The notes beneath the pieces were generated by a model. The model was not told where the DNA came from. It ran no database searches and saw only the letters and a program-made list of their open reading frames with translations. Positions 5,870-50,325 of a DNA stretch of 64,000 nt are shown one piece after another. Each line of letters starts with the position of its first letter. Position 1 is the stretch's first letter. The position numbers were made by a program, and so were the translations under genes. This stretch comes from Klebsormidium nitens (taxonomy: Eukaryota > Plantae > Klebsormidiophyceae): positions 1 through 64,000 of the forward strand of contig DF237010.1 in NCBI GenBank assembly GCA_000708835.1, in the 5' to 3' direction.

Positions 5870-8800
5870 ATGAGTCGGTCCAGCAATGGGAGGAAAGCTG
5901 GAGGCGTTGCGCACCACGCCAACGGGGTGGCTGGCGCAGAGGAGCGTAAGGGGGCGGGCCCGCCTCCGCCCGCCGCCCTGACTGCCCAGTTTGTGAAGCT
6001 GGTCCAGGAGGATGACGCGCAGGGCCTGGAGGCGGCGCTGGCTGCAGAGAAAGAGAGGCTGGCAGCGGGCGCGCGCAAGGGCAAGGCCAAAGGGAGCGAT
6101 CCGTCAGCAAACTTGAAGAAGCGGTTGCTGCAATATGCTGCAGCGTGCGACGCAGACGAGTGCTGTGCATACCTGCTCGATGAAGAGGAGGTGCCCATTG
6201 ACGGGGGAGACGAACACGGGCTGACCCCGCTGCACCACGCGGCCCACAACCACGCCAAGGCGGCAGTGCAAGCGCTGTTTGACAGGGGGGCCGAAGGGGA
6301 CGAGCTCAGCAAGGAGGGCAAGACGCCGCTGGAAACGGCAATTGCAAGCCCAAAGTAAGCAGCCCTGTAACAGAAGCCTTGCCTTTGATTTTTTTTGTGA
6401 ACTGTTGGGCGAGAGAAGTCACCAGGATTTTGCATCGCTATAGATTACCAGCTCCCAACATTTGACTCATGTTTGCGTTGAATCTGGTACTATGTTGGGT
6501 TCGGTGCAAATTGTGATGATCACTTGAATGCGATGTCCGGAAGGTTGTCTGTTGGGGGAAAAACCCTCGTCCTTAGGGTTAGACACTCTTGACCATGACT
6601 ACAGGCTTGTGTTTTCTTTTAGCTTTGCTCGATTTTTGACCCTGTATGTATCTAATGTCCCTCTCACAGGTTTCTTGCAATCTGCAATGAAGTCAGACTG
6701 TCAGCAGCGGTCTGAGACAGTGATCAATGCCAGCTTAGCCAGAACGCACGTGACGAATGCTAGCATCAGATGCTGGTGCCAGCTTATTGCACTTTTTTTG
6801 TCGGCGCCAGCTTAATGCATCCAGGACCTCAGTCCAGTTGCCACTCTGTTCCAAACCAGCCGCGGTGACATTGAGTGCTTGCCCAGGAAGAATCGCTCCC
6901 GTGTGGAGCCTCCAGTGCACCTCGCCCCTCCGCTCTGCGTTCCTGCCTTCACCGTGGCTGCTGTGCTGTGGTGCAGGTTGCACATTGAGTGGACCCCGCA
7001 CATGCAGGCCACCAGCCTGGTGGAGCTCATGCAGAGCAAGGTGCGCACCTTCGCGCCGCACAGCGGCCGCTGCGTCTCAACTGGAGTGGGGGTCTTGCCT
7101 TTGAGCGTGCTGGATCAGGGGGTTAGTCAGGGCGCACCGCCAGAGCATGGGCCTAGCTTGTGGCACGGCCGTGGGCTCTTCTGGGCTTGTGGCCGCCCTT
7201 TGTTGTAGGAGCCCTTGAAATTGTTTTGAGAGCTCTTTAACAAAGCTTCTGAAGAATTCTGCAGCGCAGGGCTGCGCCAACACGCTGGCGCCCCTATGGG
7301 CCTGTTGGGCAGGGGCCTATCAGTGTTGTGTGTAAGCATCGTAGCGCTGGCCTGTTGGCCTCGCTGCCTGACCCTGCCCTCTCCTGGGCTTGTTGTGTCC
7401 CCTGGCTGTATGTGAGCGCCGTCCCCCCCCTTTGCAGGAGCTGGCGTGCCTGCAGCTGTTGGCGGACATGGTCCCTGCCAGCCTGCTGGTGCAGGTGGCC
7501 TTTGCGACGGCCGCTGAGGGCGCTGTGCCGCGCCTCGTGGTGCTGCTCCTGGTGGGCAGCAAGCACATTGTGAACGCCGTCAGCCGCATTGGGGAGGCTG
7601 CCAGCGCCACGGGCACGCTGGTGGAGCTGCTGCTGCGCAAGGCGCTGGCCACGTCGCCAGGGGCCAGCGCAGACAAGGCAATCGGCGGCGCGCTGGGCCC
7701 GCGTGTGGAGCGCGAGGTGGCACTCAAAGCCCTCGAGGTACTGCTGCTGTGGAATCCGCGCCTGACCAGCCGCGGGCCCGAGGCACGCTCCCCGGAGCAC
7801 ATCCCGGTCATCCGCTCCGCGCGCGCCAACGACGCCGAGGTGGTGCGCCTACTGCTGGAGGCAGGGGCTGATGTCAATGAGACGGACAGCGAGAGCAACA
7901 CGGCGCTGCACTGGTGCCTGCGCGGGCCGCGCGCGGGGCTGGACGTGCGCGTGGTGAAGCGGCTGCTGGAGCACGGCGCGGCGTGCACGGCCAGCAACAA
8001 GCTGGGGGCCACGCCGGTGCACACTGCGGCAGGGCACGGGCACGCGGAGGCGCTGCGCCTGCTGCTGACACAGGAGCCGGCAGCGGTGAACGTGCTGGCG
8101 GCGACCAAGGAGACGGCGCTGCACTACGCCGTCAAGAACGGGCATGCCGAGTGCGCGCGCGTGCTGTTGCTCATGGGCGCCAACCGCAGCGTAGTTAACG
8201 TGCGCAACCAGCGGCCCGCAGACCTGGCTGCATCCCCTGTGCTGCGCCGCCTGCTGGGCTCCACAGATCTGGCCCTGCTCAATACGCCCATCGCTGAGGC
8301 GGAGGACCCCGCAAGGAGCCCCAGCGGGGGCAGCGGGTTCGCGGGGGATGCGGATAGTCTGGCAGACGACGGATGGCAGGTTCAGACGGGGCGCACCAAG
8401 ACAGCGGGACAGGGGGGCAACCACCCCAAGGGGGCAACTTCGCCCAAGGTGGGCGGACTAGCCAGCAGCGGGGCCAGCAGTAGTGGTGTCCCTGCCGGGG
8501 GGATGACGATTGGTATTGGGGGAGTGCAGCTGGATGCCAACAACATGCCCCCCGCCAAGACGGTGCTGTGCAAGTTCTTCTCGTCAGGGCAGGGCTGCTC
8601 GTGGGGCTCCTCCTGTCACTTTGCCCACAACAAGGAGGAGCTCCTCGCAGCCCGTGCCAAGCAGGGCCTGCCCCGGGGCGGGCCCCCCTCCCACCGCGAT
8701 CGCCCCACCCCCACCCCCAAGCAGGCCTCAACGCCCCCTTCTGTCCCGGTGGAGGCCCCGCGCGCCCCCCCTCCTGCCCCGCTTGCCGCGTCGGCCCCCC

Positions 8801-10780
8801 GGCCACAGGCTCCCCAGAGCGCCGCCCAGCAGGATGCGGCCCCGCTGCAGGACAACCGTTTCCTCAAGACCAAGCTCTGTGTGCGATTCAGCAAGCTCGG
8901 GGGCTGCCCGAGGGGAGACAAATGCACGGTGCGGCCCCCCGCCCTGGCTGCCAGCAGGGCGCTCCGGCTGGCCTGGCAGCATGGTCCACTGGGCAGCACG
9001 ATCCCCGCCTTCAAGACGGCCTGCTGCAATCAATCAGCTTGCCATTTGGGTGCCCCTCTTTGATTAGTCTTGTCACAGCCTCTCGTCTGATCCCGCTGCT
9101 CGCTTGTTTCCTGATCGGCTGACACGTCCCACGGTTTCTCCGATGTGCAGTATGCTCACGGATTTGGCGAACTGCGGCCTTGGGTGGAGGGCGAGGGTGG
9201 GGGCAGTGCGGGCGGCAGCCGGCCCGCCACCCCGGCCAGCGTGCCGCCCAGCGTGCCAGCCACCCCCGAGGCAGCGTGGATGCAGGACGACGAGCTGGCC
9301 GACAAGAAGAAGGTCTTTGTGGGAGGCCTGCCCGCCTTTGTAGAAAAAGGTAAGGCTGTATTTCGAGACCATCTGGAGGCGCTGTTGAACTCGGCTCGTG
9401 AACAAGCGAGCGGATCACAAACCAGATGCTGAAGCTGTTGTAAAGCCAGAATCTGCCTGGTCAACCACTGCCGCAAGGGCCGGCTGCAGAGGATTTTATA
9501 CTCGTGCTTTCAGAGCCAGCCGCATTGGTGGCTCGAATGGGAACTCCCTTAGATGATGCAATCGTGGCAAACGGGCTTTCCAACACACGACCGGTTCCCA
9601 GCACATTGGGGTGTGCCTGTCCGTTCTCGCCTTGCGCGCCTCCTGTGTTCCTGCTTGCTGATGGTAATGCGGTTTTGCGCGCCTCGCAGACGACCTCTGG
9701 TCCTTCTTCGAGGAGAAGTTTGGCGCTGTGGCGGATGCCATGGTGGCCTACTTCCCCAACGGCGCCTCGCGCGGCTTCGGCTTCGTCACCTTCCAGCAAG
9801 AGAAGCCCGCCGCGAGTGCCGCCAAGCTGCACTACCTCCCCTTCCATGGCAAGCGTGTCGAGGTCAAGTTCGCGCAGCCGTTCCAGGACCGCTCCTCCGC
9901 CAGCCCCGGCAGCCGCGCCTCGCGTGACGGGTCCCGCCACACCAGCGGCTCCATGTCGCCCATGCCGCTGCCCCCCGCACCCACCACCGCGGCCGTACAA
10001 CCACCGCCGCTCTCCTTATCAGGCTCAGGGCCCTCCAATAGCTTCCATGCCCCGCACTCGTTACAATGCGGAGCGTATGCTGCAGTGGCCGCCCCTTCCA
10101 ATAGCCGCTCCCTTCCTTCGCCCATTGGTCCGCCATCTCCCTCGGTCGGAGTTGTGGGCCAACGTGGCCCCCCTCCCGGCAGTTATGCCGCCGCCGCCGA
10201 GCAGCAGCGGCAGGCGGAGCAGGCCCGGCACTTCGAGGAACACCCCCACTTCCAGCAGCCCGCGAGCAGCGCGCGCGAGCCGCAGCCGAGCCCCCCTCAG
10301 CGCAGCCAGCACCGGCGGGGGCCGGGCCTCGAGGTGCCGCAGGGGCGGCAGTACGAGCAGTTTCCGGTAGGGCCGCGGGCGGCGTTTGGGAACCTTGAGG
10401 GCTTTTCCACCGGGCCTGAAGACAGCAGCCTGATCTCGGAGCTCATGTCGTCGTTGGCGCTGCCGGAGCAGGCGCAGAACGGTCGGCGCAGGCCGTATGA
10501 CGGAGGAGCAGTGCAGCAGAACGGGCCAGGCTTCGGCCCCAGTCGACAGGGGCAAGGGCACGCAGCCGCGCAGGAGCTGGGCATGCCAGGCGGGAACGAG
10601 TCGCTCGACGGTGTGTGTGTGGTCTGCTGGGAACGGAAACACGCGTGCGTGGCAGTGCCCTGCGGCCACCGGAGCTTGTGTATACCCTGTAAAGACGCGC
10701 TTCAGCAGTCGAATGCTGATCGAGATTGCCCTATATGTCGGTCAACTGTTAATCATTGGGTCGCGGTTCCCCAGGGATAG
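5870..10780 (+). CDS. Ankyrin-repeat + two CCCH zinc fingers + RRM + C-terminal RING-HC protein (putative RNA-binding E3 ubiquitin ligase)
   Basis: Exons 5870-6354, 6977-7040, 7438-8928, 9151-9349 and 9690-10780 join in phase. Ankyrin motifs GLTPLHHAA, GKTPLETA, SNTALHW, GATPVHTAA, ETALHYAV. CCCH fingers KTVLCKFFSSGQGCSWGSSCHFAH and KTKLCVRFSKLGGCPRGDKCT|YAH. RRM RNP2 KVFVGGL and RNP1 RGFGFVTF. RING CVVC...VPCGHRSLCIPC...CPICR. Confidence 0.9.
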
Positions 10781-36000: not shown

Positions 36001-39000
36001 GGGGACGATCAAGAGGGTGCTTTCGAGCAAGTATGGGCTGCACTGGAAGACGTGGTGAGCCGCCCTGGCAACACTGCCGTACCTGTTGTCGAAGGGAAGA
36101 AGGAGACTCCACGTTCCACACGATCCAATCGTCTTTACCCCGCTCATTCTGCGCCGTGTGTATGAACGATGGGCAATAACATTTGAAACATCGTGTGTCA
36201 GTCGAGTCGAGTGACCGTTGATGCTAAGCGATCAAACGCTTTTAGCTGACCCGCCTGCTTTGTGCGGCCCGCAGGAGCTGCCAGACGTGTCGGCTGTGTT
36301 TGTGGACCGCCTGCTGTCCGTTGGCGTCTTCTCGGCCGAGGCTCTCACGCGGCTGCTGATCGCCCGAGGAGTGCCCCCAGCTCACGGTCGGGATGTGGCG
36401 GAAACGGCACAACGATTGCGACAAGCGGCCAAGGTAAAGCGAGATGAAACGGCAAATTCGAGCATCTGCTTCTCATGCTGCATACGAGCACGCAAAGGTT
36501 GAGGCACAGGAGGGAGATAAGAATATAACGCTCAGCAACGCACATTGCGGAGCCACCAGTGAAAAATGCGAGGCGCTTTTGGTTTATTACCCCGTTGTTC
36601 GATGCTCATACATGAGCCGATCACAAACCTTCCAAAAGTCGAGGGCGCTTCTTTCGCTCACAATAGTAAATGGGTGAGGCCTTTGGCGTCACTCCGGGCG
36701 CGTTTTCTCGATCGGACATATTGCTCTGCAGGTGCCTTCAACTGCAGACCAGGCAACCGCTCTCCGCGGCTGGCGTTCTCTCGCCCAGTCTTACGCTACC
36801 ACGTGGACTGACCTCCATCAGCCCCTCGGGCTCGCCACCAACTCAGACGGCACTTTCGCTGCGGCAGTCAACTCCGACTCGATTTCAGTCCTAAGGGCAC
36901 CCGACAAGGCGGAAACAGAACGACCAAGTACGTCGACGGAGGTAGAGAATGCTTCGCCCAGCCTGGCACGGTGCTTAGAGCTCGTTGGCGCAGGGCTGGG
37001 TAGCGTAGCAGGGGAAGTGCTGACGGAGCTGCTGCTGCGGGGGGGCAACGCGCAAGGGGCGCTGGACGCGTTCCTGGGCCTCTTAGAGGGGGGCATGTCG
37101 GCACTCGACGGCGACAGGCAAAGGCATAAACACGACCGGGAACGTATTCTGCAATTACGGCAGAGCGTAGAACAGCTGGGAAGCGGAGCAGGGGGATGGG
37201 ACGGCGTGCTGGCGCAGATGAGATTGTTAATAGCGGGGCTGGAGGCGGGGCCGGGGCAGGTAGCTGACGCTGTGGCGGGGGGGCGGCCGGGGGCCGGCCT
37301 GGCGGTCGGAGGGGGCGTGCGGCAAGCGGTGGCCGCGCAGCTGCGGCGGGCGCATCACGTGCTGCTGCTGCTGGGACTTGTACAGCGGTGTGGCGCTCAG
37401 GTAAGGAATGAATCCGCCCATATTAATCGCCCGCATGACCTTGCGAAATGCTTGGGCGCCCATGTCTTGCATCGGTGACATTGGCGTTACACAAAGCCAT
37501 CAATGTTCCACCGACCGGGTTTGAACGATCTGATAGGGACAGATTCGCTGTGAGCTCTTGCTCTGGCACACTTTCTGCCCCCTAGAAGTCTCAAGAAGGT
37601 ATCTTGCGGCCGTATGCAGGTCGGGGTGCCCCCGCCCGTGCTTGCCGCTGTCCAGTCGGAGCTGGTCCCTGCCACGTGGCGGCTGCTGTCGTCGCTGCTG
37701 CTGGTGCACAGCCTGGCCACCATCCCGGCCGCCACGCTCGCGGCCCCCTCTGGCGTCGACTTCAGCCAGCGGCTGTCCACCCTGCAAATAGGTAAGCGGC
37801 ACAACCACGAAATCACTGCCCCGAGCCAGACCTGCCGGATCTGCCCCGTGGAGAGACGGTTCCTCTTCCCCATGCATTTATTCCGTCTTTCAGACGCTCT
37901 CGCTCAGATTGTCAAGAAAAACGTGTGCGTTCCTGACAAGCAACTTGATAAGCACATGATTCCAGGTAAACACTGATGTGTAAGCAACTGAAGCTCTGTC
38001 CGTCCAGGCGACTCACGCGGCCCTCCGTCCCTTCCGCCCGGGACCCTGTCCTTGGCTGACGTCACCCTGGCCGCTCAAGGCTGGCTGCCTCCCCTCTCGT
38101 CCGCTGTCCCGCCGCCCGCTGTCCTGCTGCAAGCTGTGCAGAGCGCCCTGGGCGGTCTGCGGTGGCGCGGGGGACGGCGGGAGCCGCAAAGTGCGGTGGA
38201 GCGCGCAGCAGACCTGGCGGTGCTGCTGCTGCAACACAACCAGCACGTAGCGCTCAAGGTCAGCCGCAGCACCTCTCCGCGTTGCTTCTCAAAATGCCTA
38301 GCGTTCCATACAACCTGGGAACTTTTCAAGTATCCGGAGGCCTAAGATGCAGAGACCGTACGTTGTTGTCCACGTAGATTTCGATTTCTCGCCAAACGGC
38401 CGAGGAATGGAACGTCAACAACATCCAAACCATCCGCAATTATGCCAACTGGCGCTGCAAACGTCCGTTGCTGCGCTTTGCATTGCCAACAATCTGGAGC
38501 TCGGGTTACATTCATTCTGCCAAATGACGTATGGGACGACTCTGCTCGAAGCGCCCCACGAGGCGACGGTGATCGTTGCACACTTTCATCTTGCACTCTG
38601 CTCTGGGGTGCAGGTGTTTCTGCAACGCGTTCTTGACGTGGCTGCCAGCCTGCCCACCGACCTCGGTAACGCACCCGGCAGTGGGGGAACAGCCGCGGTG
38701 TGGTTCCTGTACGGGCTGTGCTGCCTGGCAACCACAGGGGCGGACGCTGCGCGGGAGCAAGGAGCGGAGGACGAGGCCGTGGCGGCTTTTCTCAAGTAGG
38801 GCGGCTCTGAAAGGAGCACCCTGTTGATTGGCAGTGCTGAACCATGCCGCAATATAAGGTTGAATCTCAGCTGGAGTCTTCTTTTGGGAACGGAGAGTGA
38901 TGAGATACACGGGGTTGAGATTGACAGGACTTGTGTTTGCTGTTGCCGGGCTCCTTTTATGGACGCCCTGCGCAATTCTGCCCCGTCTCATCATCCTTTT

Positions 39001-42000
39001 CCTCGTCCTTTGCTGTAACCAGGGCTGGTACCTCCGTTGGCAGCCCCGATGCCCTTTTGGCGTCAATCCTGCGGCTCTTCTCCCCTCAGCTAGCATCCAC
39101 CGCAGCAACCACATTCAACGGTAAGGCATGCGGCATGACCCTCTTTAGTTGTTGCTATTGCTGGCCCCTTGCACCCGTTAACTTCCCTGCTGGCTGCGAG
39201 TCGCTTTCGAGCTTCAATTGATAAAGCTTTACTCTTGTGTTTCTGCTACCCGTTCATCATCGATCTGGTTCTGAAATGGTTTCAAGCCTCCTTTCTTGCG
39301 TAACTATTCTGCTGAATCGCCTCTCTCGCTGTTGCCGCAGCCTCCTCGTCGGCCCTGCACCGCGTGCACTACTTCGAGCTGGTCCTCGCCCTCTTGGAGC
39401 GGTACGGCCACCTTGCCGGCGCGCTCCAGTGCGCGCGCGCCGCCCTCCAGGAGCTCGCCGCCGCCTACCCCCCCGCCCCGCCCCCTTCGGACGCTGCCTC
39501 CGACGCCGACCCAGACGGCGACCTGATGCTGTCCGGGTCCGAGCTGGCCCTCTCTAGCAGCCAGGCGCGCGAGGTGCACGCCGCGCTGCTGTGGGGCCAC
39601 GTGTTCGACCTGGCGCTGCGGCTGCGGCGCTACGGGGAGGCATATGCCGCCATCGTGAGCAATCCCGACGCGGGGAGCGCGGGGGAGAACCTGCGGCGGC
39701 TGGTGACGGTGCTGTGCGAGGCGGGCGACGTGGACGTGCTGTGCGGGCAGCAGCTGGCGTACGGGGGGAAGCTGGAGGCAGTGCACCACGAGCTGCTCAG
39801 AAAGGTGGGGACGGGAACACACAGTACTCCTTTTTAGGGCCTCCTTTGCAGTCCCTAGATTCATGACCTTGTTTGGTTGGACTGGGCGTCCTCAGAAGCT
39901 GTAACATCCTGAATTGCTATGTCCACCTTCAATCACTCGCAGTCCCACTTCGTTGTGCAGTTTCTTCGTGACCCCCCAGCTTGGCCTACAACTCGCGTGA
40001 CGTTTTGACCAATCTGACCGCCCCCTTAAAACCCCCGCCTCCACCCCCTTTCTCCAGGCCGAGACGTCGGACGTGGGTGCACAATCCAACCCGTACCGCG
40101 TCCTCTTCGCCTTCCACACGGCCCGCCACAACTGGCGGCACGCGGCGGCCGCCATGCACCGCTACGCGCAGCGCGTGGCGCAGGAGGCGCCCGTCACGGC
40201 CGCCAGCGTGCGCGTCCAAGCCGAGAGCGTCCTCGCCGCGGTCACCGCGCTGCGCCTCCTCCCGCCCGACAGTGCATGGCTGCCCGCAGAGGACGGCATC
40301 CCCGGGCCCAGCAAACGGCCGCGCATCGAGGGTGAGGCCACCGACAGACACTCCTGGCGCAGCCTGGCGTCCATAAGTGCGGCTGGAACACTCCTAAACT
40401 AAATGTGCTCCATAAGTGTGGAGTAGATATTCACCTTCGGGCAACATGTACCCCACTTCGGACTTATCGCATATCCATGGGAATGAGGTGAGGAGGTGTT
40501 TTTAGCATTCGCTTGTTTGCTATGTTTTTGGTGCAGGCGAGGGTGCGGGGCGGCTGCGCGTGACTGTGGGCATCCCCGACCTGCAGCAGCAGCATGCGGT
40601 TCTGCTGGCGCGCCTCTTCCTGCTGCAGCGGCCGCAGGAAAGCATCCGCAGACGAGCAGGTGCGATCACGTCACGCCTCAACAGCCGAGCGTCAGAAAAA
40701 AGAAGGGGAAAGTCTCAAGATGGGAATGCTCGTCGCTTTCATCCTGCAATGATTGCTTTGTTTGACGGCAAGTCTTGCATCTTGGAGGGTCTGAATATTC
40801 CCTTCGAATAGCAGCGCCAGGTCTAAATAAGAATGAAAGCTTTTCGTTGTCGTTGCGTCCGAAGTACAACGTCCAGTCGCTGTTTCTCATCTGCAAGCCG
40901 ATTTTCCTGCGTGATTAGGGCTCGCCTCCACCTGCCGCCCGTCTAACCCAGTTGCGTGCGTGCTTTCTTGTGTTGGTACAGAGAGCGTGGCTGCGGTGCC
41001 GGAGGTGGTGTGGCTGCTGCTGGAGGCCGCCGCCTTCGACCAGGCCCTGTCGCTCGCCACTGTCTGCCTCACCGGCGCGCCCCTCCGCAAGTGAGCCATC
41101 GACTTCGTCGTGCTCCTGAAGTCGGAGGATACTGACCGAACTGCTATTTATTCTGTCGCCTCTCAACAGGCAGGATCATCAGGGGAGCCAATGCTCAAGT
41201 GATGCTTCCCGCTTTAGTATACTCAGTCACCGAGTGGAGCCGGCTTCTTACCTCGGCGCTCCCTACCCACTGCTTCTTCCGTCGCCTTTGTCGTCAAGTT
41301 ACCGCCGACTTCGGGCAGCAACCTTCCTAAGAGTCTGTGCAGTTTTTGCTGTGCATATTTCAGCAAGCCAGCTGTATCAAAGCGATATTTGGGGACTAGC
41401 GACCTCAGTACTTTCTGTATGCCAGCGTGCTGACGCCTTGCCTGGCCGTGTGCAGGGAGTTGGAGGCCATATTTCGGAGCCTGGCGGGGGCGTGCTGCCG
41501 CGCACAGGCCCAAGAGGACAGGGAGCACAACCCCGCCCGGTAAGCGCATTTGCACAGAGAGCGGCTTCGGATGCTTCCGGCGCATCTTCGACTCTCTCTC
41601 TGGCAAAAGTAACAAAGGATTGCGTGTCTGCCTGAGGTGTGAGTCGGTGGATCCGTGGGCCCGGATCGGGGTCGCCAAATGTTACTGGGCGCAGACAGGC
41701 TAACAGAGCTAGCTCAAGCCTGGCTACCGTTTAAGATGCCACATCGGCCACTTGTTTCCAGGGCCTTGACTACAAAGACGTGTCTTGCCCAGCACGCGTG
41801 CCGTTCAGCGCCCGCTGCTGACGTTCTCTTTCTCCTGCCCTGGTCCCCAGGTCGGCTGCCCCCCGGTCGGTGGCGTCCTCCCTGGACGGCTTCTCCCCGC
41901 TCCTGCAGGAGCGCAGCGCCGAAGACACCACCGCCACCGCCGCCACGCTCTGGCGCAGCTTGCAGGCCTACCTCGTAAGGAAGCCCCCAGCCGACACCCA

Positions 42001-44580: not shown

Positions 44581-47500
44581 TCAAAAGGACGGGCCGGTCA
44601 GGTAACCCGAGAGGATAAAGAACTTTTTCCCGGTGGCTGGTTGCTGTACTGGCTCGAGCCACGTGTACTTGTTGGCACCATTGAGCACATAGTAAATATA
44701 CTTGGGGGCGCCTTCGGCAAAGGCGGTCAACAATGCGGCCGCCACATCTGGCGTCTCGCTTTCCTGCAGGATAAGAAACTCAAAATTCGAAACCGCGCTG
44801 CGACGAATGTTGCCTCACGTTGACTCGAAAGGGCTTTCTTGTCCACAAGTAGTGGCACACCAGCCGTGCGACGATTCCGTGCTGATGCATCTTTGTTGGC
44901 ATCCTAAAGAAAAAGTGCATGACCTCGAAAACCGACCGGCCCGCACCGCTCCAAACCGTAACGCCATGGATTCGAGTCGACTCGTTCCGCAGAAGAGCTC
45001 TCTCCACCGTCACGCCGGCGGAACCTCTAAACTCGTCTTGCAAAGTGAGCGCCCCGGATTACGCGATCGGCTCTGACCAGGGCGGAAGCTCTCACCAGGG
45101 GGGTCTTCCCCGCCTTGGCAAAGACGTCGCCGTGCGCCAGGCAGCGGAACCCGGTAGCCGGGTCGGCGTCGTAGACAGTGACGTAGAAGCCCCCCAGGGT
45201 GCGCCCGGGGTACACCTCCTGGTTGGCGGCGTCCAGCAGCGGCTGGACCGTCCCCGCATACCGGAGGATGCGGCCGAAGTTGCTGGCCAGCGTGTAGGCC
45301 ACGACCGGGGTGCAGAAACTGTAGGTGGAGTAGAGGCACTGGGAGATCTCGGTGTAGCCCTGCGCAAGGAAGAACAACCGTCGAATCACGATTGGATTGT
45401 GACCCCCAGTACTACCGAGCAAAATCGTTGACGGCTTACTGGTTAAGCAGGTGTGGTTTGGAGGGAAGCATTCTTGTGCTGGTAACGCCCACGAGAAGAC
45501 CGCCGCGTGTGAGCTTGCAGGTAAGTCTGGTCAGCGTTAACTAACGCGAGCATGAGCGGCCTGAGGAAGAAACCGCCATACGGGGATTCGGACCAGGCGC
45601 GAGATGCCAACGGATCCTTTGGAAGGAAATCCTAACACGTGCAAAGGGAAGTGCTGAAACCGGTCGCGAGACTCTCTCTCCCGGGCACTCGAAGGCCGCC
45701 GTTCCCCCTCCGCCCCCTGCCGGTTCTCTCACCGAGATGACGACGTTAGCGCCTTGGCGATGGACCTCTTGAGCCCCAGGTCCGTCTTGCCCACGAAGAT
45801 GTACTCGTAAGTGCCCCCCCCGGATTTCCCGAGCTCCAGCGTCACTTCGCGGAAGTTTGTGTACACCGGGATGCGCGCGGCCGACAGGCCCTTGGTGGCG
45901 GAGTTGCCAATCCCGGTCGCGTTCGGGTAAGCGACCCGGTGGAAGTTTACGTCCAGGACGAGGGGGTAGAAGCCGTTCGCCTGATACCGGGGGTCGTTGC
46001 TGTTGATGGCCTCGTACACCTGGCAAAGGAGGCCGTGTTTGAGCGCAAACGGCAAAAGTGTTCTAAAGGGCGGGAGTAAACAGCATGTCCCGTTTGATCA
46101 ACTGAGGTCGTGGACAACGTTGTGCTGGCCAACGATGTTCCCTTGATGCCGAAGATATGGATATTGGTGGAGCGGAATGATTTACCACTCGAGGAACCCG
46201 ACAGGAGGAAAACGAAGAGAATCAGTAGTCGCGAAGCGAAGCTGCCACCGAGTTCTGATTGGAAGCGATACGTGAAGCTGCTGAAGTTACCGGGGTCAAC
46301 GAAATGAGACAAGTTAGTGAAAACTTTACCCGTGATTAGTAAGTGGTCAGCCAAACCAAAGCCGGTGCACGAACTACCGGCAGAACAAATCAAGTCAGCA
46401 CGTTGACCCGACCCACCTTTCGGGGGTCGCTCGCTGCGTTGACGTCAGCAACAACCAGGTTCACTAGGTTCACCATGGCTGCATACTCGCAGCCGGTTTC
46501 CTTGACGGGGTCCGAGTGACACGCGGGGAGGCTCAGGCTGTCGTCCTGGTAGAGGGGTAAAGGGAGTGTTAGTCTGTTTCGCTTTTGTCGAAGGGGCGTG
46601 ATGCAAATCTGCCTTCGGCACCTACGAATTCTGCAGCCTAGAGAGCATCGTTGTTATGACCCGTTGATAAGGTCCATTTGTACATTCACCTACGAATTCT
46701 GCTCTTACCCAAGCTTGTGTCTTTTACGCTTGTTTGAGTCAGCCTCTTGTCAGCTGATTTTTACCGGATAACGACTGGCGGAAGGGCACAATAAAGGTGG
46801 TTAAAATCAGTGCCTAAGTCCCGTAATGGAGACCCTATTAGCTGCTCGCAGTCGCGCCGCGTAACACGCCTCGATGAGTCAAACCCATGATTGCTGTCCA
46901 GATACGCTAGGCATCACCATTGCAGCATTAAGACACTTCGAAGAAAGAAGCGCAAAGGAATGGAAGAAAATTGCATTTTGGGGCCAGTTCGGTGGCGCCT
47001 CTCACCGCATTCCGTACCGGGGAAGAGTCGGTCAAGTACCCCGCAAGAACGAAGTACTTCCGGCCCGTGACTACTGACTCCACAGGCTGGAGCCACGTGT
47101 ACTTGACCCGTCCATTAAGGAGGTAACCGACGTACTGGGCGATTCCTTGCTCGAAAGCACTGGTCAGCGCGGCCGCAACATCAGGAGCCTCGCTTTCCTG
47201 CAGGGATGTCGTCGCTACGTGCGTAAAGAAAGGCCCAAGAGTCGAGTATGACTTCAGTGCGCGTCTTCGTGAATCTGAAATTCTTTGTATGCGGATACTG
47301 TTGGGGGTTATTCAGCAGACCGGGCCGGGATGGAGAGTCGGGAGTGCCTAAGAGTGTGTTCTGGAAGATCGAGGGCCTCAACGAAAGGAGTTTAGAGAGC
47401 TGTTCTTGGAAGGAAATCGGGGCTTGCTCTAAACTAATAGCACCGCCTATGAGAACCTCTCCTACGAGGTTTAGCGACGGAAATCATGGATTATGCTAAG

Positions 47501-50116
47501 GATATTTCTTTAAGTATGAGCTGTTCAAGGAGTAGGCCTGCCCAACATACGTGACCAGGTGCAGAGCAGTGAAGGAAGGTTCAGAGCGATGGAAGCGACC
47601 CCAGAAGGATATAGAAGCAGCAGCTTAAGCCCACGGTGCAAAAGGAGAGTACTAATCTGATGGAACATGTAATAGTGTGACCCTCTCTGACCTGGGGGGT
47701 CTTCCCCGCCTTTTCGATGACGGCCCCGTGCGCCATGCAAACGTAGCCAGTGGCGGGGTTACCGTCGTAGATCTGGGTGTAGAAGCCGCCCGGTATGGTC
47801 CCGGGGTAAACCTGCCTGTTGACTGCGTCAATCAGTGTCTGCGGATTAGGCGCATACTCCAGGCCGGTCGCCAGGTTGGTGGAGAGCGCGTAGGCTGCCA
47901 CCGGGCTGCAAAAAGTGTAGTTGGTGTAGAGGCACGAAGAGATCTCGGTGTACCCCTGGGGAAGGTTGGGCAGAAGAGAGAGGTTAGAGCCACTCCTTTA
48001 ATCAAAGAAGCTTCGCCTTTGTGAAGAAAGATTTCCACGCCCCAAAGACCGGAGGCGTGGACCAAACAATCAGAGCTCTCGCTGGCAAATGTGTGACCCG
48101 TGTGTACCCTGTTGCAAGTCAGAGGCTATATCAATTTTTGTGATGACAAGGAAACGCTTTGAACGGCAGTGCTTCAAGACTAGCATTCTTTGGAGTTTCC
48201 CTTCGAGTTTGATACACGACACTCGTTGTATGATGGTTTTAGACTTTAAACAAGAAGCTTTGTACGTACAAAGGTAAGAACTTTGCTGTGACGGATTGGT
48301 TTCTATAACCTGGAAACACAACAAGATTCTCAGGAATTCTCGCCTAGGAACACGAGCCCATCTCTTTTAGAGTGTGAATGCACAACTATAAGCTAGTGTA
48401 AATACAGAAGGCTATTGACGTGGGCAGCCACCATTTCCTTTGCGGCATCCCCAGGTAAGTCCCCATCTGAGCCTCACCGCTCCTACGGAATACCCATTTG
48501 GCAGTTCCGGCCCAATGTAAGACTTCTTCAGCCCGAGCCGACCCCCCGCACCCGTGAAGAGATACTCTGTGGTGCCCCCCCCGGCTCTGGCAATCGCGCG
48601 GACGTTCTCAGCGAAGTTGGGGTACGTTGGCACTCCAATGTCGTCATTGGAGTCCTGCAACTCCAAGCCAAGGCTCGAGGTGTTCACGTGAGCCACGCGA
48701 ATGCCCTTGCTATCGTACACAAACGTGTAGAAGCCGTTGAACACATATCGCGGGTCCTTGTTGTTGAGTTTCGTATAGACCTGCGAAAACTAAAGGCCCT
48801 GTCAGCGTAGGGATTGCTAAGGAATGTCAAGAAGGTGAGCACCTGGGGATCATTGATTGGGCGGTGCGCGCACCATTCACCGCTTCTGTACCCATGCCTC
48901 TTTGAGTGTTCCCGTGTCAACAAAGTTGAAGGTTGCTTGATTGGCTCCTGCATCAATGGTATCTGGATATACTTTGTCGCAAATAGCAAAGATTTGGATA
49001 TCCAATGAGGGGAGTTATTGTATCTCCCTCATGAGTTACAAACAACAAAACACGCCAAGCGGACTAATCAGTCAAGAGTCGGAGGTGGCCAGCCTCACAT
49101 GGTGACTCTGACATGTCTTTCTAACATGGCTCCTGTGGGACAGACGGACGCAAGCCCTGAGACACCGATTTTCTACCAAACAGCCCAAGAAGATCCACCA
49201 ACGTGCATCAGGTGGGAATGCAGCATGCACGGCAGTGTAGTCACCTCAAAGGGATCCTTGGCTGCCGCCACGTCTGCGATGACGTTCAGCACCAGGTTTC
49301 GCGTGATGGCCAGCTCGCAGCCGGTCTCCTTGGCGGGATCGTTGATGCAGTTGGTGATGGAAGACTGCTGCGCCTGGGTGCCAGGCTGAAGATGCGGGGA
49401 AAGACGACAATCTGTATTGGTTGACCACTCGCTGCTTGGAAGGGAGCCCAGTTTGTATCGCCAGCAGCAAGTGGATGCCGTTAGGTGCAGCAGTCCGAGA
49501 ACTGACATCTGGCGCACTTCTCCGGTGTGCCAGATGGGTTAAGGTGGTGCCAAATGGTTGCTCAGCTATGAGCTTGCCAGAAAGATCTTGATGCAGGTTG
49601 ACTGCAGTAATCAAATGCGGGATGAATGCAGCTTCTATTGAACAAAGAGATAGCCCCTCCTTGAGCATTGAAAGTATCATGGTATGCAACTTATGAAAGC
49701 AAACCTTCTGCTATTGAGTGCTGAAACCGATCGGCGCAGTCAAGCAGACCCGCGCAACATGAAGCAAAGAAGCAGACTCGTCAAGTCCAGGATAAGTACA
49801 GCATTTGGTGGGCATTCAGCATCAGGGTCAGCATCGGTCAACAACTATAAGTAAAAAGCAACTTTCTAGGCGCAACCCGAACTCAACTTACAGGCCCCAG
49901 CAGCTTTGACAATGCGGTCCAGTTAACATCAATCTATCTAATCCAATTAAACTTGAGCTGCAGGAATCAATGCATGGTTTACAAAGCCAAAACTTCGCTC
50001 ACATGAGCCAAGCAGTAACACTAAAAGATAGAAGAAGCACTCACCAGCATAAAGCATATGAAGAGCCCCATCATTGCAAGCAGCACTGTGCCGCAGGTCC
50101 GCAGTCGTGGCCCCAT
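44581..50116 (-). CDS. Predicted secreted protein with four tandem single-Cache (sCache_2-like) domains, about 610 aa, 9 exons
   Basis: Exons 50116-50045 (signal peptide MGPRLRTCGTVLLAMMGLFICFML), 49385-49245, 48780-48478, 47955-47692, 47197-47006, 46545-46417, 46019-45733, 45359-45096, 44763-44581. Each repeat has the Cache_2 pattern FY-x-[FI]-[VY]-D...AH...G...GGG-x-x-x-Y...K-x-SY...AGY. One junction (45733/45359) is out of phase. Confidence 0.8.
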
Positions 50117-50325
50117 GTTGTTCACTGATTGCTTAGCAACGGCGCCCATATTGTGGGCAGCTGCGTCAGCGCGCGCCTTTGAGCTGATCAGAATATAGAA
50201 TGCTGCCGCCTGAAGCTTCTTTTCAAGAGGCGGCTGACTCCAGATCGAAAACGATGCTGCCAAAGTCCGCAGCCATTCAGGAGGCCGAGAATTTGCGCTG
50301 CGGCCGATTGATGATAGTGAAAGTA

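What the first reader, a model, noticed from the sequence alone, without database searches (positions are those of the whole stretch)
44581..50116. Secreted protein built only of four bacterial-type single-Cache sensor domains, with no transmembrane anchor or output domain
Seen: a signal peptide (likely cleavage TQA-QQ), then four repeats such as NGFYTFVYDSKGIRVAH...LGLELQD...AIARAGGGTTEYLF...LKKSY...VGAGY. Each is preceded by a two-Cys segment (CINDPAKETGC, CLYTNYTFC, CHSDPVKETGC, CLYSTYSFC). The protein ends ...LSGYLTGPSF* with no hydrophobic helix. Established: sCache_2 domains are extracytoplasmic small-ligand sensors (often carboxylates or urea) of bacterial chemoreceptors and histidine kinases; the best-known eukaryotic Cache domains are the dCache_1 modules of alpha2delta calcium-channel subunits. 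Inference: a horizontally acquired, intron-invaded, disulfide-stabilised soluble ligand-binding protein, acting as an extracellular metabolite sensor, scavenger or co-receptor in a streptophyte alga. I know of no such system in land plants. This is the strongest novelty candidate in the window.
Basis: partly seen in the sequence, partly recalled or inferred. Interest (0 to 1): 0.8.

Follow-up and report, generated by a model that had tools for sequence, protein, structure and literature searches.

The report
Secreted tandem Cache protein, frame-broken copy
A spliced, transcribed gene of the streptophyte alga Klebsormidium nitens encodes a secreted protein made only of bacterial-type Cache ligand-binding domains with no signalling part; this copy carries a 10-base deletion that puts its fourth domain out of frame.

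Summary
The gene is real. It is KFL_000610080 (GAQ80730.1, "hypothetical protein") of Klebsormidium nitens, on the minus strand, with nine exons. RNA contigs confirm five of its eight GT-AG introns.

It encodes a signal peptide and four domains in an A-B-A-B order. Each domain follows a conserved Cys-Cys loop. There is no transmembrane, GPI or output part.

Pfam misses the domains (17-18 bits against a cut-off of 25). Three other tests place them in the sCache_2 type:
- Profile-profile comparison with prokaryotic tandem sCache_2 domains gives 97% (A-type) and 96% (B-type) probability.
- An AlphaFold model of the first A-B pair has mean pLDDT 83.
- Structure matches reach Z 13.1 to 4k08, 12.0 to 4exo and 11.8 to TlpB.

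Exon 7 is 287 bases because of a 10-base deletion relative to the paralog. The RNA-confirmed exon 7/8 junction therefore reads domain 4 out of frame, giving 462 family residues plus a 100-residue nonsense tail. The public 608-residue model avoids this with an internal acceptor that I did not see in RNA.

The family is small. It has three K. nitens paralogs (two already flagged by this scan on other DNA), one metagenomic algal homolog and a related Cys-loop protein in another eukaryote. The nearest prokaryotic relatives are also extracytoplasmic tandem sCache_2 proteins without an output domain. The ligand and the function are untested.

The parts
50045..50116 (-). Exon 1: the signal-peptide exon (MGPRL...CFML). 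The public model starts 33 nt upstream, at 50149. The donor is CTG|GTGAGT.
   Evidence: A hydrophobic segment is found only at the N-terminus. Homologous 66-nt first exons occur in both paralogs. No RNA contig covers this exon.
49245..49385 (-). Exon 2: the end of the signal peptide (PGTQA|QQ), the Cys loop C-x9-C (CINDPAKETGC) and the first helix of domain A1.
   Evidence: The junction to exon 3 is confirmed by RNA contig X3 record 6. The Cys pair is invariant in all A-type domains.
48478..48780 (-). Exon 3: the core of domain A1 (GFY...AH...GGGTTEY...LGLKK...SVGA), including the conserved N-x-S/T sequon.
   Evidence: Pfam sCache_2 at 18.1 bits, below the cut-off of 25. Atlas features score 0.94 to sCache_2 clusters. 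phmmer matches prokaryotic sCache_2 arrays. Structure match Z 13.1 to 4k08. Sequon.
47692..47955 (-). Exon 4: the Cys loop C-x7-C (CLYTNYTFC), the helices and the first two strands of domain B1.
   Evidence: The junction to exon 5 is confirmed by RNA contig X2 record 4. The AlphaFold model and Cache matches cover residues 155-292. hhalign of the B-type profile gives 95.8%.
47006..47197 (-). Exon 5: the second half of domain B1 and the linker (...AGYLTDSSPVRNA).
   Evidence: The junctions on both sides are confirmed by RNA. The donor used is GCG|GTGAGA at 47005.
46417..46545 (-). Exon 6: the Cys loop (CHSDPVKETGC) and the first helix of domain A2.
   Evidence: The junctions on both sides are confirmed by RNA contig X1 record 2.
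45733..46019 (-). Exon 7: the core of domain A2. It is 287 nt, the only exon that is not a multiple of 3. A 10-nt deletion relative to the paralog lies between 45767 and 45766, just after ...DLGLK. The last beta-strand of the domain is lost from the reading frame.
   Evidence: Exon lengths. DNA alignment with the paralog's 300-nt exon. RNA contigs X2 record 3 and X9 record 7 match the genome with 0 differences. The highest dN/dS of the gene, 0.43, is in this exon.
45096..45359 (-). Exon 8: the Cys loop (CLYSTYSFC) and the first half of domain B2. It is out of frame in the RNA-supported splice form.
   Evidence: The joint 45733|45359 is seen in RNA. The open frame is intact and dN/dS against the paralog is 0.12 for B2.
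45305..45318 (-). First 14 bases of the shortened exon 8 of the public 608-aa model. That model uses an internal acceptor (CTACAG|TTTCTG), so its exon 8 starts at 45318. This restores the frame but drops GYTEISQCLYSTYS, including the first Cys of the pair.
   Evidence: The model is reproduced exactly with this acceptor. The acceptor was not seen in the RNA contigs laid.
44581..44763 (-). Exon 9: the second half of domain B2, ending ...GYLTGPSF with a stop at 44581-44583. In the shifted frame a stop falls at 44727-44729.
   Evidence: RNA contig X1 record 1 runs colinear from 44760 to 44519, past the stop, so no further exon is spliced on within the 62 nt it covers beyond the stop.

Best explanation
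This is a nuclear gene of Klebsormidium nitens. It belongs to a small family of eukaryotic secreted proteins built only of tandem sCache_2-type Cache domains.

Each domain has an N-terminal helix pair and a five-stranded PAS-like sheet. Each is preceded by a short conserved Cys-Cys loop, presumably a disulfide formed in the secretory pathway. A-type and B-type domains alternate. One A-B pair resembles a bacterial double sCache_2 (dCache_2) module.

The family is homologous to prokaryotic extracytoplasmic tandem sCache_2 proteins that also lack an output domain. It most likely entered eukaryotes by horizontal transfer. Phase-0 introns were gained before the A-B unit was duplicated.

The copy in this window has lost 10 nt in exon 7. 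With the splice junction seen in RNA, it therefore makes a signal peptide, an intact A1-B1 pair, an A2 domain lacking its last strand, and a 100-residue nonsense tail. Domain 4 is encoded but not read.

The most likely mode of action is inferred from the fold only. After secretion, the A-B pair binds a small extracellular molecule in the Cache pocket; solved sCache_2 domains include complexes with urea (3ub6) and formate (8py0). Because the protein has no transmitter of its own, it would act by sequestering or presenting that ligand, or through a separate partner.
For: Shown:
- Identity and organism.
- Five GT-AG introns confirmed in RNA contigs from two studies.
- Eukaryotic neighbour genes.
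- Homology of A-type and B-type domain profiles to bona fide prokaryotic sCache_2 repeats: hhalign 97.4% (E 1e-11) and 95.8% (E 7.5e-9). Those repeats score 92-563 bits on Pfam sCache_2.
- AlphaFold model of residues 40-335 with mean pLDDT 83.3 and pTM 0.68.
- Structure matches. A1: Z 13.1 to 4k08, 12.0 to 4exo, 11.8 to 3ub6 (TlpB). B1: Z 9.5-11.7 to Cache modules.
- The A-B pair matches an Atlas dCache_2/sCache_2 cluster at TM 0.58 over 243 residues.
- No hydrophobic segment other than the N-terminus.
- Cys pairs are invariant in all domains, in both paralogs and in a second alga. An N-x-S/T sequon sits at the same column in every A-type domain.
- dN/dS is 0.11-0.32 in all four domains against the paralog.
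- The paralogs have the same exon structure.
- The frameshift rests on exon lengths, the RNA joint 45733|45359 with 0 mismatches, and the 10-nt gap against the paralog's intact exon, which reads ...NYVASLPGGYIVFA|GYTEV.
- The prokaryotic relatives are a lipoprotein, signal-peptide proteins or membrane-anchored proteins, none with an output domain.
Against: - Pfam sCache_2 is below its gathering score on the whole protein (16.6 bits) and on exon 3 (18.1 bits), and is absent on paralog P0003.
- A profile built only from Klebsormidium domains finds nothing significant among PDB sequences.
- No ligand, localisation or disulfide has been measured.
- Only one low-depth RNA contig (depth 2.6) covers the exon 7/8 junction, so a minor in-frame isoform cannot be excluded.
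- Domain 4 has an intact open frame and low dN/dS. This fits either a very recent break or continued use.
- The direction and donor of the transfer are unresolved. The algal domains group with those of another eukaryote's protein.
Confidence: 0.72

Rival explanations
1. The public 608-residue model is the real product. Splicing from 45733 to the internal acceptor at 45318 restores the frame, so a four-domain protein is made. It lacks 14 residues at the junction between domains 3 and 4, including one Cys of the fourth pair.
For: The model is reproduced exactly and is in frame. The acceptor has a usable CTACAG. Domain 4 keeps an intact frame and has dN/dS 0.12.
Against: The only RNA contig across this junction uses the canonical acceptor at 45359, which is also the position homologous to the paralogs' acceptor. 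The internal acceptor has a weaker pyrimidine tract. The product would lack the last strand of domain 3 and the start of domain 4. Gene predictors routinely pick such sites to keep a frame open.
Confidence: 0.2
2. The family does not bind small ligands. The Cache fold serves as a stable, repeated, disulfide-braced module of a structural, adhesive or protective cell-wall protein.
For: There is no output domain. The protein is built of tandem repeats with Cys loops and a conserved glycosylation sequon. More than 90% of Cache domains are fused to signalling modules, and stand-alone haem-Cache proteins appear to have non-sensor roles (bioRxiv 10.64898/2026.02.01.703092).
Against: Core motifs shared with prokaryotic sCache_2 domains are kept in all domains: GFY, AH, the GGG-x-x-Y strand and the Lys-bearing strand. 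Purifying selection acts over whole domains. Neither point proves binding.
Confidence: 0.2
3. The window copy is a pseudogene in decay, and its transcription is residual.
For: There is a frameshifting 10-nt deletion. Constraint is relaxed in exon 7 (dN/dS 0.43, 49% identity to the paralog). RNA contig depth is low, at 2-5.
Against: The signal peptide and the first A-B pair are intact, with dN/dS of 0.11-0.19, and match the natural single-unit paralog P0003 in layout. All splice sites are intact and in use. The shifted stop lies in the last exon, so nonsense-mediated decay is not expected.
Confidence: 0.3
4. The gene is bacterial contamination or a misassembly.
For: The domains are of a bacterial type.
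Against: The gene has eight spliceosomal introns, five of them seen spliced in RNA. It sits on a 255-kb scaffold among eukaryotic genes. Two paralogs and a metagenomic homolog share the same intron positions.
Confidence: 0.01

Closest known systems
sCache_2 sensor domains of bacterial chemoreceptors and kinases (Pfam PF17200; structures 4k08 Adeh_3718, 4exo/2qhk, 3ub6 TlpB)
   Same: The fold and topology match (Z 11.8-13.1, 129-134 aligned residues). The core motifs are shared. Both are located outside the cytoplasm.
   Different: The algal protein has no transmembrane helices and no MCP or kinase output. It has four domains in tandem, a Cys-Cys loop before each domain, introns and a eukaryotic signal peptide. 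Its sequence is too diverged to pass the Pfam cut-off.
Prokaryotic output-less tandem sCache_2/dCache_2 proteins. None carries a name from its source, and my literature searches found no paper on such proteins. Examples: P0002 from an Acidimicrobiales MAG (lipoprotein, 13 repeats), P0004/P0015, P0008/P0009 and P0010.
   Same: These are the nearest sequence relatives (phmmer E 4e-27 to 8e-4; hhalign 97%). They are also arrays of sCache_2 domains outside the cell with no transmitter.
   Different: They have no Cys loops. They are anchored by a lipobox, an N-terminal helix or a C-terminal helix rather than being soluble. They fall on the other side of a branch with 96/91 support in the domain tree.
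P0005/P0012: a 497-residue protein on a eukaryotic contig from public run SRR20217180, next to Deltex and WWE-PARP genes
   Same: It has three sCache_2 domains (Pfam 51 bits), each preceded by a C-x7-C loop. It groups with the Klebsormidium domains.
   Different: The gene has no introns. Identity is only 26-29%. The organism is unknown.
Eukaryotic Cache proteins: alpha2delta calcium-channel subunits and CACHD1 (dCache_1 plus VWA), and the CHASE domain of plant cytokinin receptors
   Same: They share the general Cache/PAS-like fold (Z 8.5-10 to 8x90 and 8s7c; Z 9.2 to 3t4j).
   Different: They belong to different Cache families, carry VWA or kinase parts and are membrane-attached. They are not the best matches.
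Stand-alone haem-binding sCache proteins (DUF3365/Tll0287 family; bioRxiv 10.64898/2026.02.01.703092)
   Same: They are a precedent for Cache domains that occur without any signalling module.
   Different: They have a single domain with a CXXCH haem motif, and they are bacterial. The algal protein has no CXXCH motif.

Membership tests
sCache_2 (Pfam PF17200, Cache clan) | Score at or above the Pfam gathering threshold (25 bits) | tested here: not met
   Exon 3 scores 18.1 bits and the whole protein 16.6 bits. Paralog P0003 has no hit.
sCache_2 (Pfam PF17200, Cache clan) | Demonstrable homology to accepted members | tested here: met
   hhalign of the A-type profile gives 97.4% (E 1e-11) and of the B-type profile 95.8% (E 7.5e-9) against prokaryotic repeats that pass Pfam with 92-563 bits. 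phmmer of exon 3 matches them at E down to 4e-27.
sCache_2 (Pfam PF17200, Cache clan) | Single-module Cache fold: N-terminal helices, two strands, a helical insert, then three strands | tested here: met
   The AlphaFold model has mean pLDDT 83.3 and this order of elements in both domains. The best structural matches of A1 are the three solved sCache_2 domains, at Z 11.8-13.1. B1 matches Cache modules in general, at Z 9.5-11.7.
sCache_2 (Pfam PF17200, Cache clan) | Location outside the cytoplasm | tested here: inconclusive
   An N-terminal hydrophobic segment with an A-x-A site occurs in all three paralogs. Cys pairs and an N-x-S/T sequon are conserved. No predictor or experiment was available.
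sCache_2 (Pfam PF17200, Cache clan) | Binding of a small ligand in the pocket | not testable with these tools
Biochemistry is needed.
dCache_2 (Pfam PF08269; a double module made of two sCache_2) | Two sCache_2 modules forming one double domain | tested here: inconclusive
   On exon 3 the dCache_2 model gives only a non-significant 13.3 bits (E 0.047, cut-off 26.5), and it does not appear for the whole protein at E up to 0.1. The A-B model matches an Atlas dCache_2/sCache_2 cluster at TM 0.58 over 243 residues with rmsd 5.1. The prokaryotic relatives pass dCache_2 strongly.
Signal-transduction receptor (MCP, histidine kinase, cyclase) with a Cache sensor | Transmembrane helices and a cytoplasmic output domain in the same protein | tested here: not met
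   There is no hydrophobic segment after the signal peptide and no output family in Pfam. RNA runs unspliced past the stop. Both paralogs also end right after the last domain.
alpha2delta / CACHD1 (VWA plus dCache_1) | VWA domain and dCache_1 modules | tested here: not met
   No VWA or dCache_1 hit. The structural matches are only at the level of the general fold.

The most novel reading that the evidence does not exclude
A lineage of streptophyte algae, and at least one other eukaryote, took up a prokaryotic output-less poly-Cache protein. It was rebuilt with disulfide loops, glycosylation and introns into a family of soluble apoplastic metabolite-binding proteins. This would be a previously unrecognised class of eukaryotic extracellular small-molecule receptor or scavenger, possibly used by a soil-crust alga to read or capture organic acids, urea or bacterial signals, and working through a separate membrane partner.
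Probability: 0.3. Interest if true: 0.65.

Novelty: new variant of a known kind. Interest (0 to 1): 0.5.

Why it matters
Cache domains are the main extracellular small-molecule sensors of prokaryotes. According to Upadhyay et al. 2016 (PMC4822843) they are rare in eukaryotes. The best-known eukaryotic cases are calcium-channel alpha2delta subunits and the plant CHASE receptors.

This work finds a secreted, output-less, disulfide-looped sCache_2 array in a streptophyte alga close to the land-plant lineage. It has paralogs under purifying selection and a relative in another eukaryote. This adds a new architectural variant and a probable case of cross-domain gene transfer.

It also draws attention to the equally unstudied prokaryotic poly-sCache_2 proteins without outputs. 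The proteins are small, soluble and cheap to express for ligand screens.

Three practical points follow:
- The public annotation is "hypothetical protein" with no Pfam domain.
- The public gene model for this copy hides a frameshift.
- The paralog's model carries a doubtful C-terminal extension.

Tried and rejected
- Pfam on single exon translations gave only a sub-threshold sCache_2 hit on exon 3 and nothing on the other seven pieces.
- A Klebsormidium-only domain profile against PDB sequences gave nothing significant; the best match was pectin lyase at E 0.19.
- Word-index searches returned only the query and one paralog for P0001, and only the query for P0003. The domain profile found one metagenomic exon.
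The genome scan with P0002 only named its own Acidimicrobiales MAG and a weak Methanocorpusculum match.
- Two metagenome scans, with the A-type and B-type profiles, were blank. The patterns would also have missed the known homolog L008, so the blanks mean little.
- The Atlas look-up for P0005 failed twice because the machine was busy.
- Literature searches for the gene's identifiers, and for Cache domains in Klebsormidium or algae, found nothing relevant.
- I first looked for an extra mini-exon or a GC donor to bridge exons 7 and 8 in frame. I dropped this once RNA showed the direct joint.
- I first thought the A-B pair was acquired as a pair, because A and B each resemble the prokaryotic profile more than each other. 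The domain tree instead places A, B and P0005 together, so this stays open.

Full report
**What is there**

The minus strand of 44581-50149 carries a nine-exon gene. I assembled it from open frames and splice consensus. A phmmer search of exon 3 against 1.84 billion representative proteins then returned the public protein for this locus: GAQ80730.1, KFL_000610080, UniProt A0A0U9HIG3, a "hypothetical protein" of Klebsormidium nitens.

The exons, in window coordinates, are:
- E1 50116-50045 (the public model starts at 50149)
- E2 49385-49245
- E3 48780-48478
- E4 47955-47692
- E5 47197-47006
- E6 46545-46417
- E7 46019-45733
- E8 45359-45096
- E9 44763-44581

All eight introns are GT-AG and 332-659 nt long.

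Contigs from four public runs of the same organism, belonging to two studies, lie on the exons with 0 mismatches. They skip introns 2, 4, 5, 6 and 7 exactly at the predicted sites. One contig continues unspliced 62 nt past the stop. The tool could only guess that these runs are RNA, but the exact intron skips mean the contigs come from spliced transcripts. So the gene is transcribed and spliced. Depth is low, and contigs cannot give expression levels.

The neighbouring genes are ordinary eukaryotic ones: Nup160, an ankyrin-CCCH protein, an RRM-RING protein and a WD40 protein. Contamination is excluded.

**The observation**

- The N-terminus is the only hydrophobic segment. It ends in TQA|QQ, and the paralogs have AQA|Q and CQS|Q at the same place.
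- The four repeats are two diverged types in an A-B-A-B order. A1 and A2 are about 41% identical, and B1 and B2 about 59%.
- Each domain follows a Cys pair: C-x9/10-C before A-type domains and C-x7-C before B-type domains. These Cys are invariant across the family, including a homolog from another species.
- All A-type domains share an N-x-S/T sequon at the same alignment column.
- The last exon ends in ...GYLTGPSF followed by a stop, with no hydrophobic tail.

Every exon length is a multiple of 3 except E7, which is 287 nt. The RNA contig that crosses intron 7 joins 45733 to 45359. E7 ends after two bases of a codon, but E8 starts on a codon boundary, so exons 8 and 9 (domain 4) are read out of frame. 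The seen transcript encodes 462 family residues, then 100 residues rich in Pro, Ser, Thr and Arg, and stops at 44729-44727.

The paralog KFL_000580250 (P0027, 62% identical, the same nine family exons) has a 300-nt E7 that reads ...DLGLKKNYVASLPGGYIVFA|GYTEV. Aligning the two exons shows a 10-nt gap in the window gene between 45767 and 45766. Downstream of the gap, the old frame would still read ...GANVVIS|GYTEIS.

The public 608-residue model keeps the frame open by using an internal acceptor at 45318. This drops 14 residues, including one Cys. I reproduced that model exactly, but I did not see this acceptor in RNA.

dN/dS against the paralog is 0.19 for A1, 0.11 for B1, 0.32 for A2 (0.43 in E7 alone) and 0.12 for B2, with saturated dS. 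Domain 4 was therefore under constraint for most of its history. Either the break is recent or a minor in-frame isoform exists.

**What the domains are**

Pfam alone does not settle it. sCache_2 scores 18.1 bits on exon 3 and 16.6 bits on the whole protein, against a cut-off of 25. Three independent lines do settle it.

1. Sequence. Exon 3 matches prokaryotic proteins that pass Pfam sCache_2 and dCache_2 strongly, at 92-563 bits. Klebsormidium-only profiles of A-type and B-type domains match a profile of those prokaryotic repeats at 97.4% (E 1e-11) and 95.8% (E 7.5e-9).
2. Language-model features. Exon 3 scores 0.94 to sCache_2 clusters, with 189 of 256 features shared. The first half of the B domain gives only a weak lead, at 0.84.
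3. Structure. An AlphaFold model of residues 40-335, built with a 27-row alignment, has mean pLDDT 83.3 and pTM 0.68. Both domains show helix-helix-strand-strand-helices-three strands.
   - In a search of 48,161 solved chains, A1 is closest to the three solved sCache_2 domains: 4k08 at Z 13.1 (rmsd 2.9, 129 residues), 4exo at Z 12.0 and 3ub6 (TlpB) at Z 11.8.
   - B1 matches Cache modules in general: 3li8 at 11.7, 5wbf at 11.2, 4zr7 at 11.0, CitA at 9.8 and 8py0 at 9.5.
   - The A-B pair as a whole matches an Atlas cluster annotated dCache_2/sCache_2, at TM 0.58 over 243 residues.

**Family and origin**

The family is small.
- K. nitens has three members: this gene, the four-domain P0027, and the single-unit P0003 (KFL_007210060, 311 residues). 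All share the same intron positions. The two paralogs match, by gene length, the two earlier notes of this scan on other DNA of this genome.
- An 85-kb contig from a JGI metagenome carries a single A-B unit. It has the same exon breaks, 45-64% identity, conserved Cys pairs and an F-box gene nearby. This points to a second alga.
- A 497-residue intron-less protein (P0005) sits between Deltex and WWE-PARP genes on a contig from a public run, so it comes from another eukaryote. It has three sCache_2 domains, each with a C-x7-C loop.

In a domain tree, the Klebsormidium A-type and B-type domains and the P0005 domains lie on one side of a branch with 96/91 support. The prokaryotic repeats lie on the other side. 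A1, A2 and B2 of the two four-domain paralogs pair up, so the four-domain layout predates the paralog split.

The prokaryotic relatives are themselves extracytoplasmic arrays with no output domain:
- a lipoprotein with 13 repeats from an Acidimicrobiales MAG;
- proteins with an N-terminal or C-terminal membrane anchor;
- a protein with a signal peptide.

The output-less tandem layout is therefore inherited, not an algal invention. Transfer from prokaryotes into eukaryotes is the simplest reading. Donor, direction and number of events remain open.

**How it probably works**

This section is inference. The protein enters the secretory pathway. The Cys pairs form short disulfide loops at each domain entry, and the A-type domains are N-glycosylated. 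The folded A-B unit then binds a small molecule in the Cache pocket. With no transmitter, it can only sequester the ligand, present it, or signal through a partner. Nothing here identifies the ligand. In two prokaryotic relatives the neighbouring genes include ABC transporter parts, which is no more than a hint.

For this particular copy, the likely active part is the first A-B unit. Domain 3 loses its last strand, and domain 4 is not read in the transcript that was seen.

**Comparison with what is known**

Stand-alone Cache proteins are unusual: more than 90% of Cache domains are fused to signalling modules (bioRxiv 10.64898/2026.02.01.703092). Cache domains in eukaryotes are rare and have been attributed to horizontal transfer (PMC4822843). 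I found no paper on this gene or on Cache domains in Klebsormidium. I rate the finding as a new variant of a known kind. It is interesting for the evolution of extracellular sensing and cheap to test, but no function has been shown.

**Limits**

- No signal-peptide predictor was available.
- The exon 7/8 junction rests on a single low-depth contig.
- Exon 1 and introns 1, 3 and 8 have no RNA support.
- The blank metagenome scans are uninformative.

Noticed in passing
L006:8301-10762 (paralog KFL_000580250): The public 713-residue model of the paralog splices from ...GYLT to an exon about 2 kb downstream, which adds 105 residues. That exon is about 70% identical to a sequence at L006:196-519, inside the upstream neighbour gene. 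Reading straight on gives ...GYLTGSV followed by a stop, like the window gene. The extension is probably an annotation artefact.
   Followed up: partly
window 44581-50116: All eight introns are phase 0, and every exon except the damaged exon 7 is a multiple of 3. Intron positions are the same in unit 1 and unit 2, in both paralogs and in the metagenomic homolog. The introns were therefore gained before the A-B unit was duplicated.
   Followed up: yes
window 48478-48780 and 45733-46019; alignment A6 column 77: An N-x-S/T sequon lies right after the AH strand and is conserved in all five K. nitens A-type domains. It is also present (NVS) in the metagenomic homolog. It is a candidate N-glycosylation site.
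   Followed up: partly
window 36732-40376, + strand: Exons of a Nup160/Nup120-type nucleoporin gene lie convergent with the Cache gene (Pfam TPR_NUP160_120_M at E 6e-17).
   Followed up: partly
window 7390-10780, + strand: There are two long open frames. One has ankyrin repeats and CCCH zinc fingers. The next has an RRM fragment and a C3HC4 RING finger.
   Followed up: partly
L002 and L003 (prokaryotic relatives P0015 and P0002): The poly-sCache_2 genes sit beside ABC transporter genes: SBP_bac_5 plus two permeases at L002, and Bmp plus an ABC ATPase at L003. The P0015 contig also carries a PaREP1 gene, which in my recollection is an archaeal family; I did not test this.
   Followed up: no
L001 (Logan contig of run SRR20217180): An intron-less gene for a protein with three sCache_2 domains and Cys loops lies between a Deltex-type RING-DTC gene and a WWE-PARP gene. 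This is a second, unidentified eukaryote with this kind of protein.
   Followed up: partly
P0006 (Logan, 86 aa): This is a short open frame that closely resembles exon 3 of paralog KFL_007210060 and then runs on into what looks like an intron. It probably comes from the genome of another Klebsormidium strain or species.
   Followed up: no
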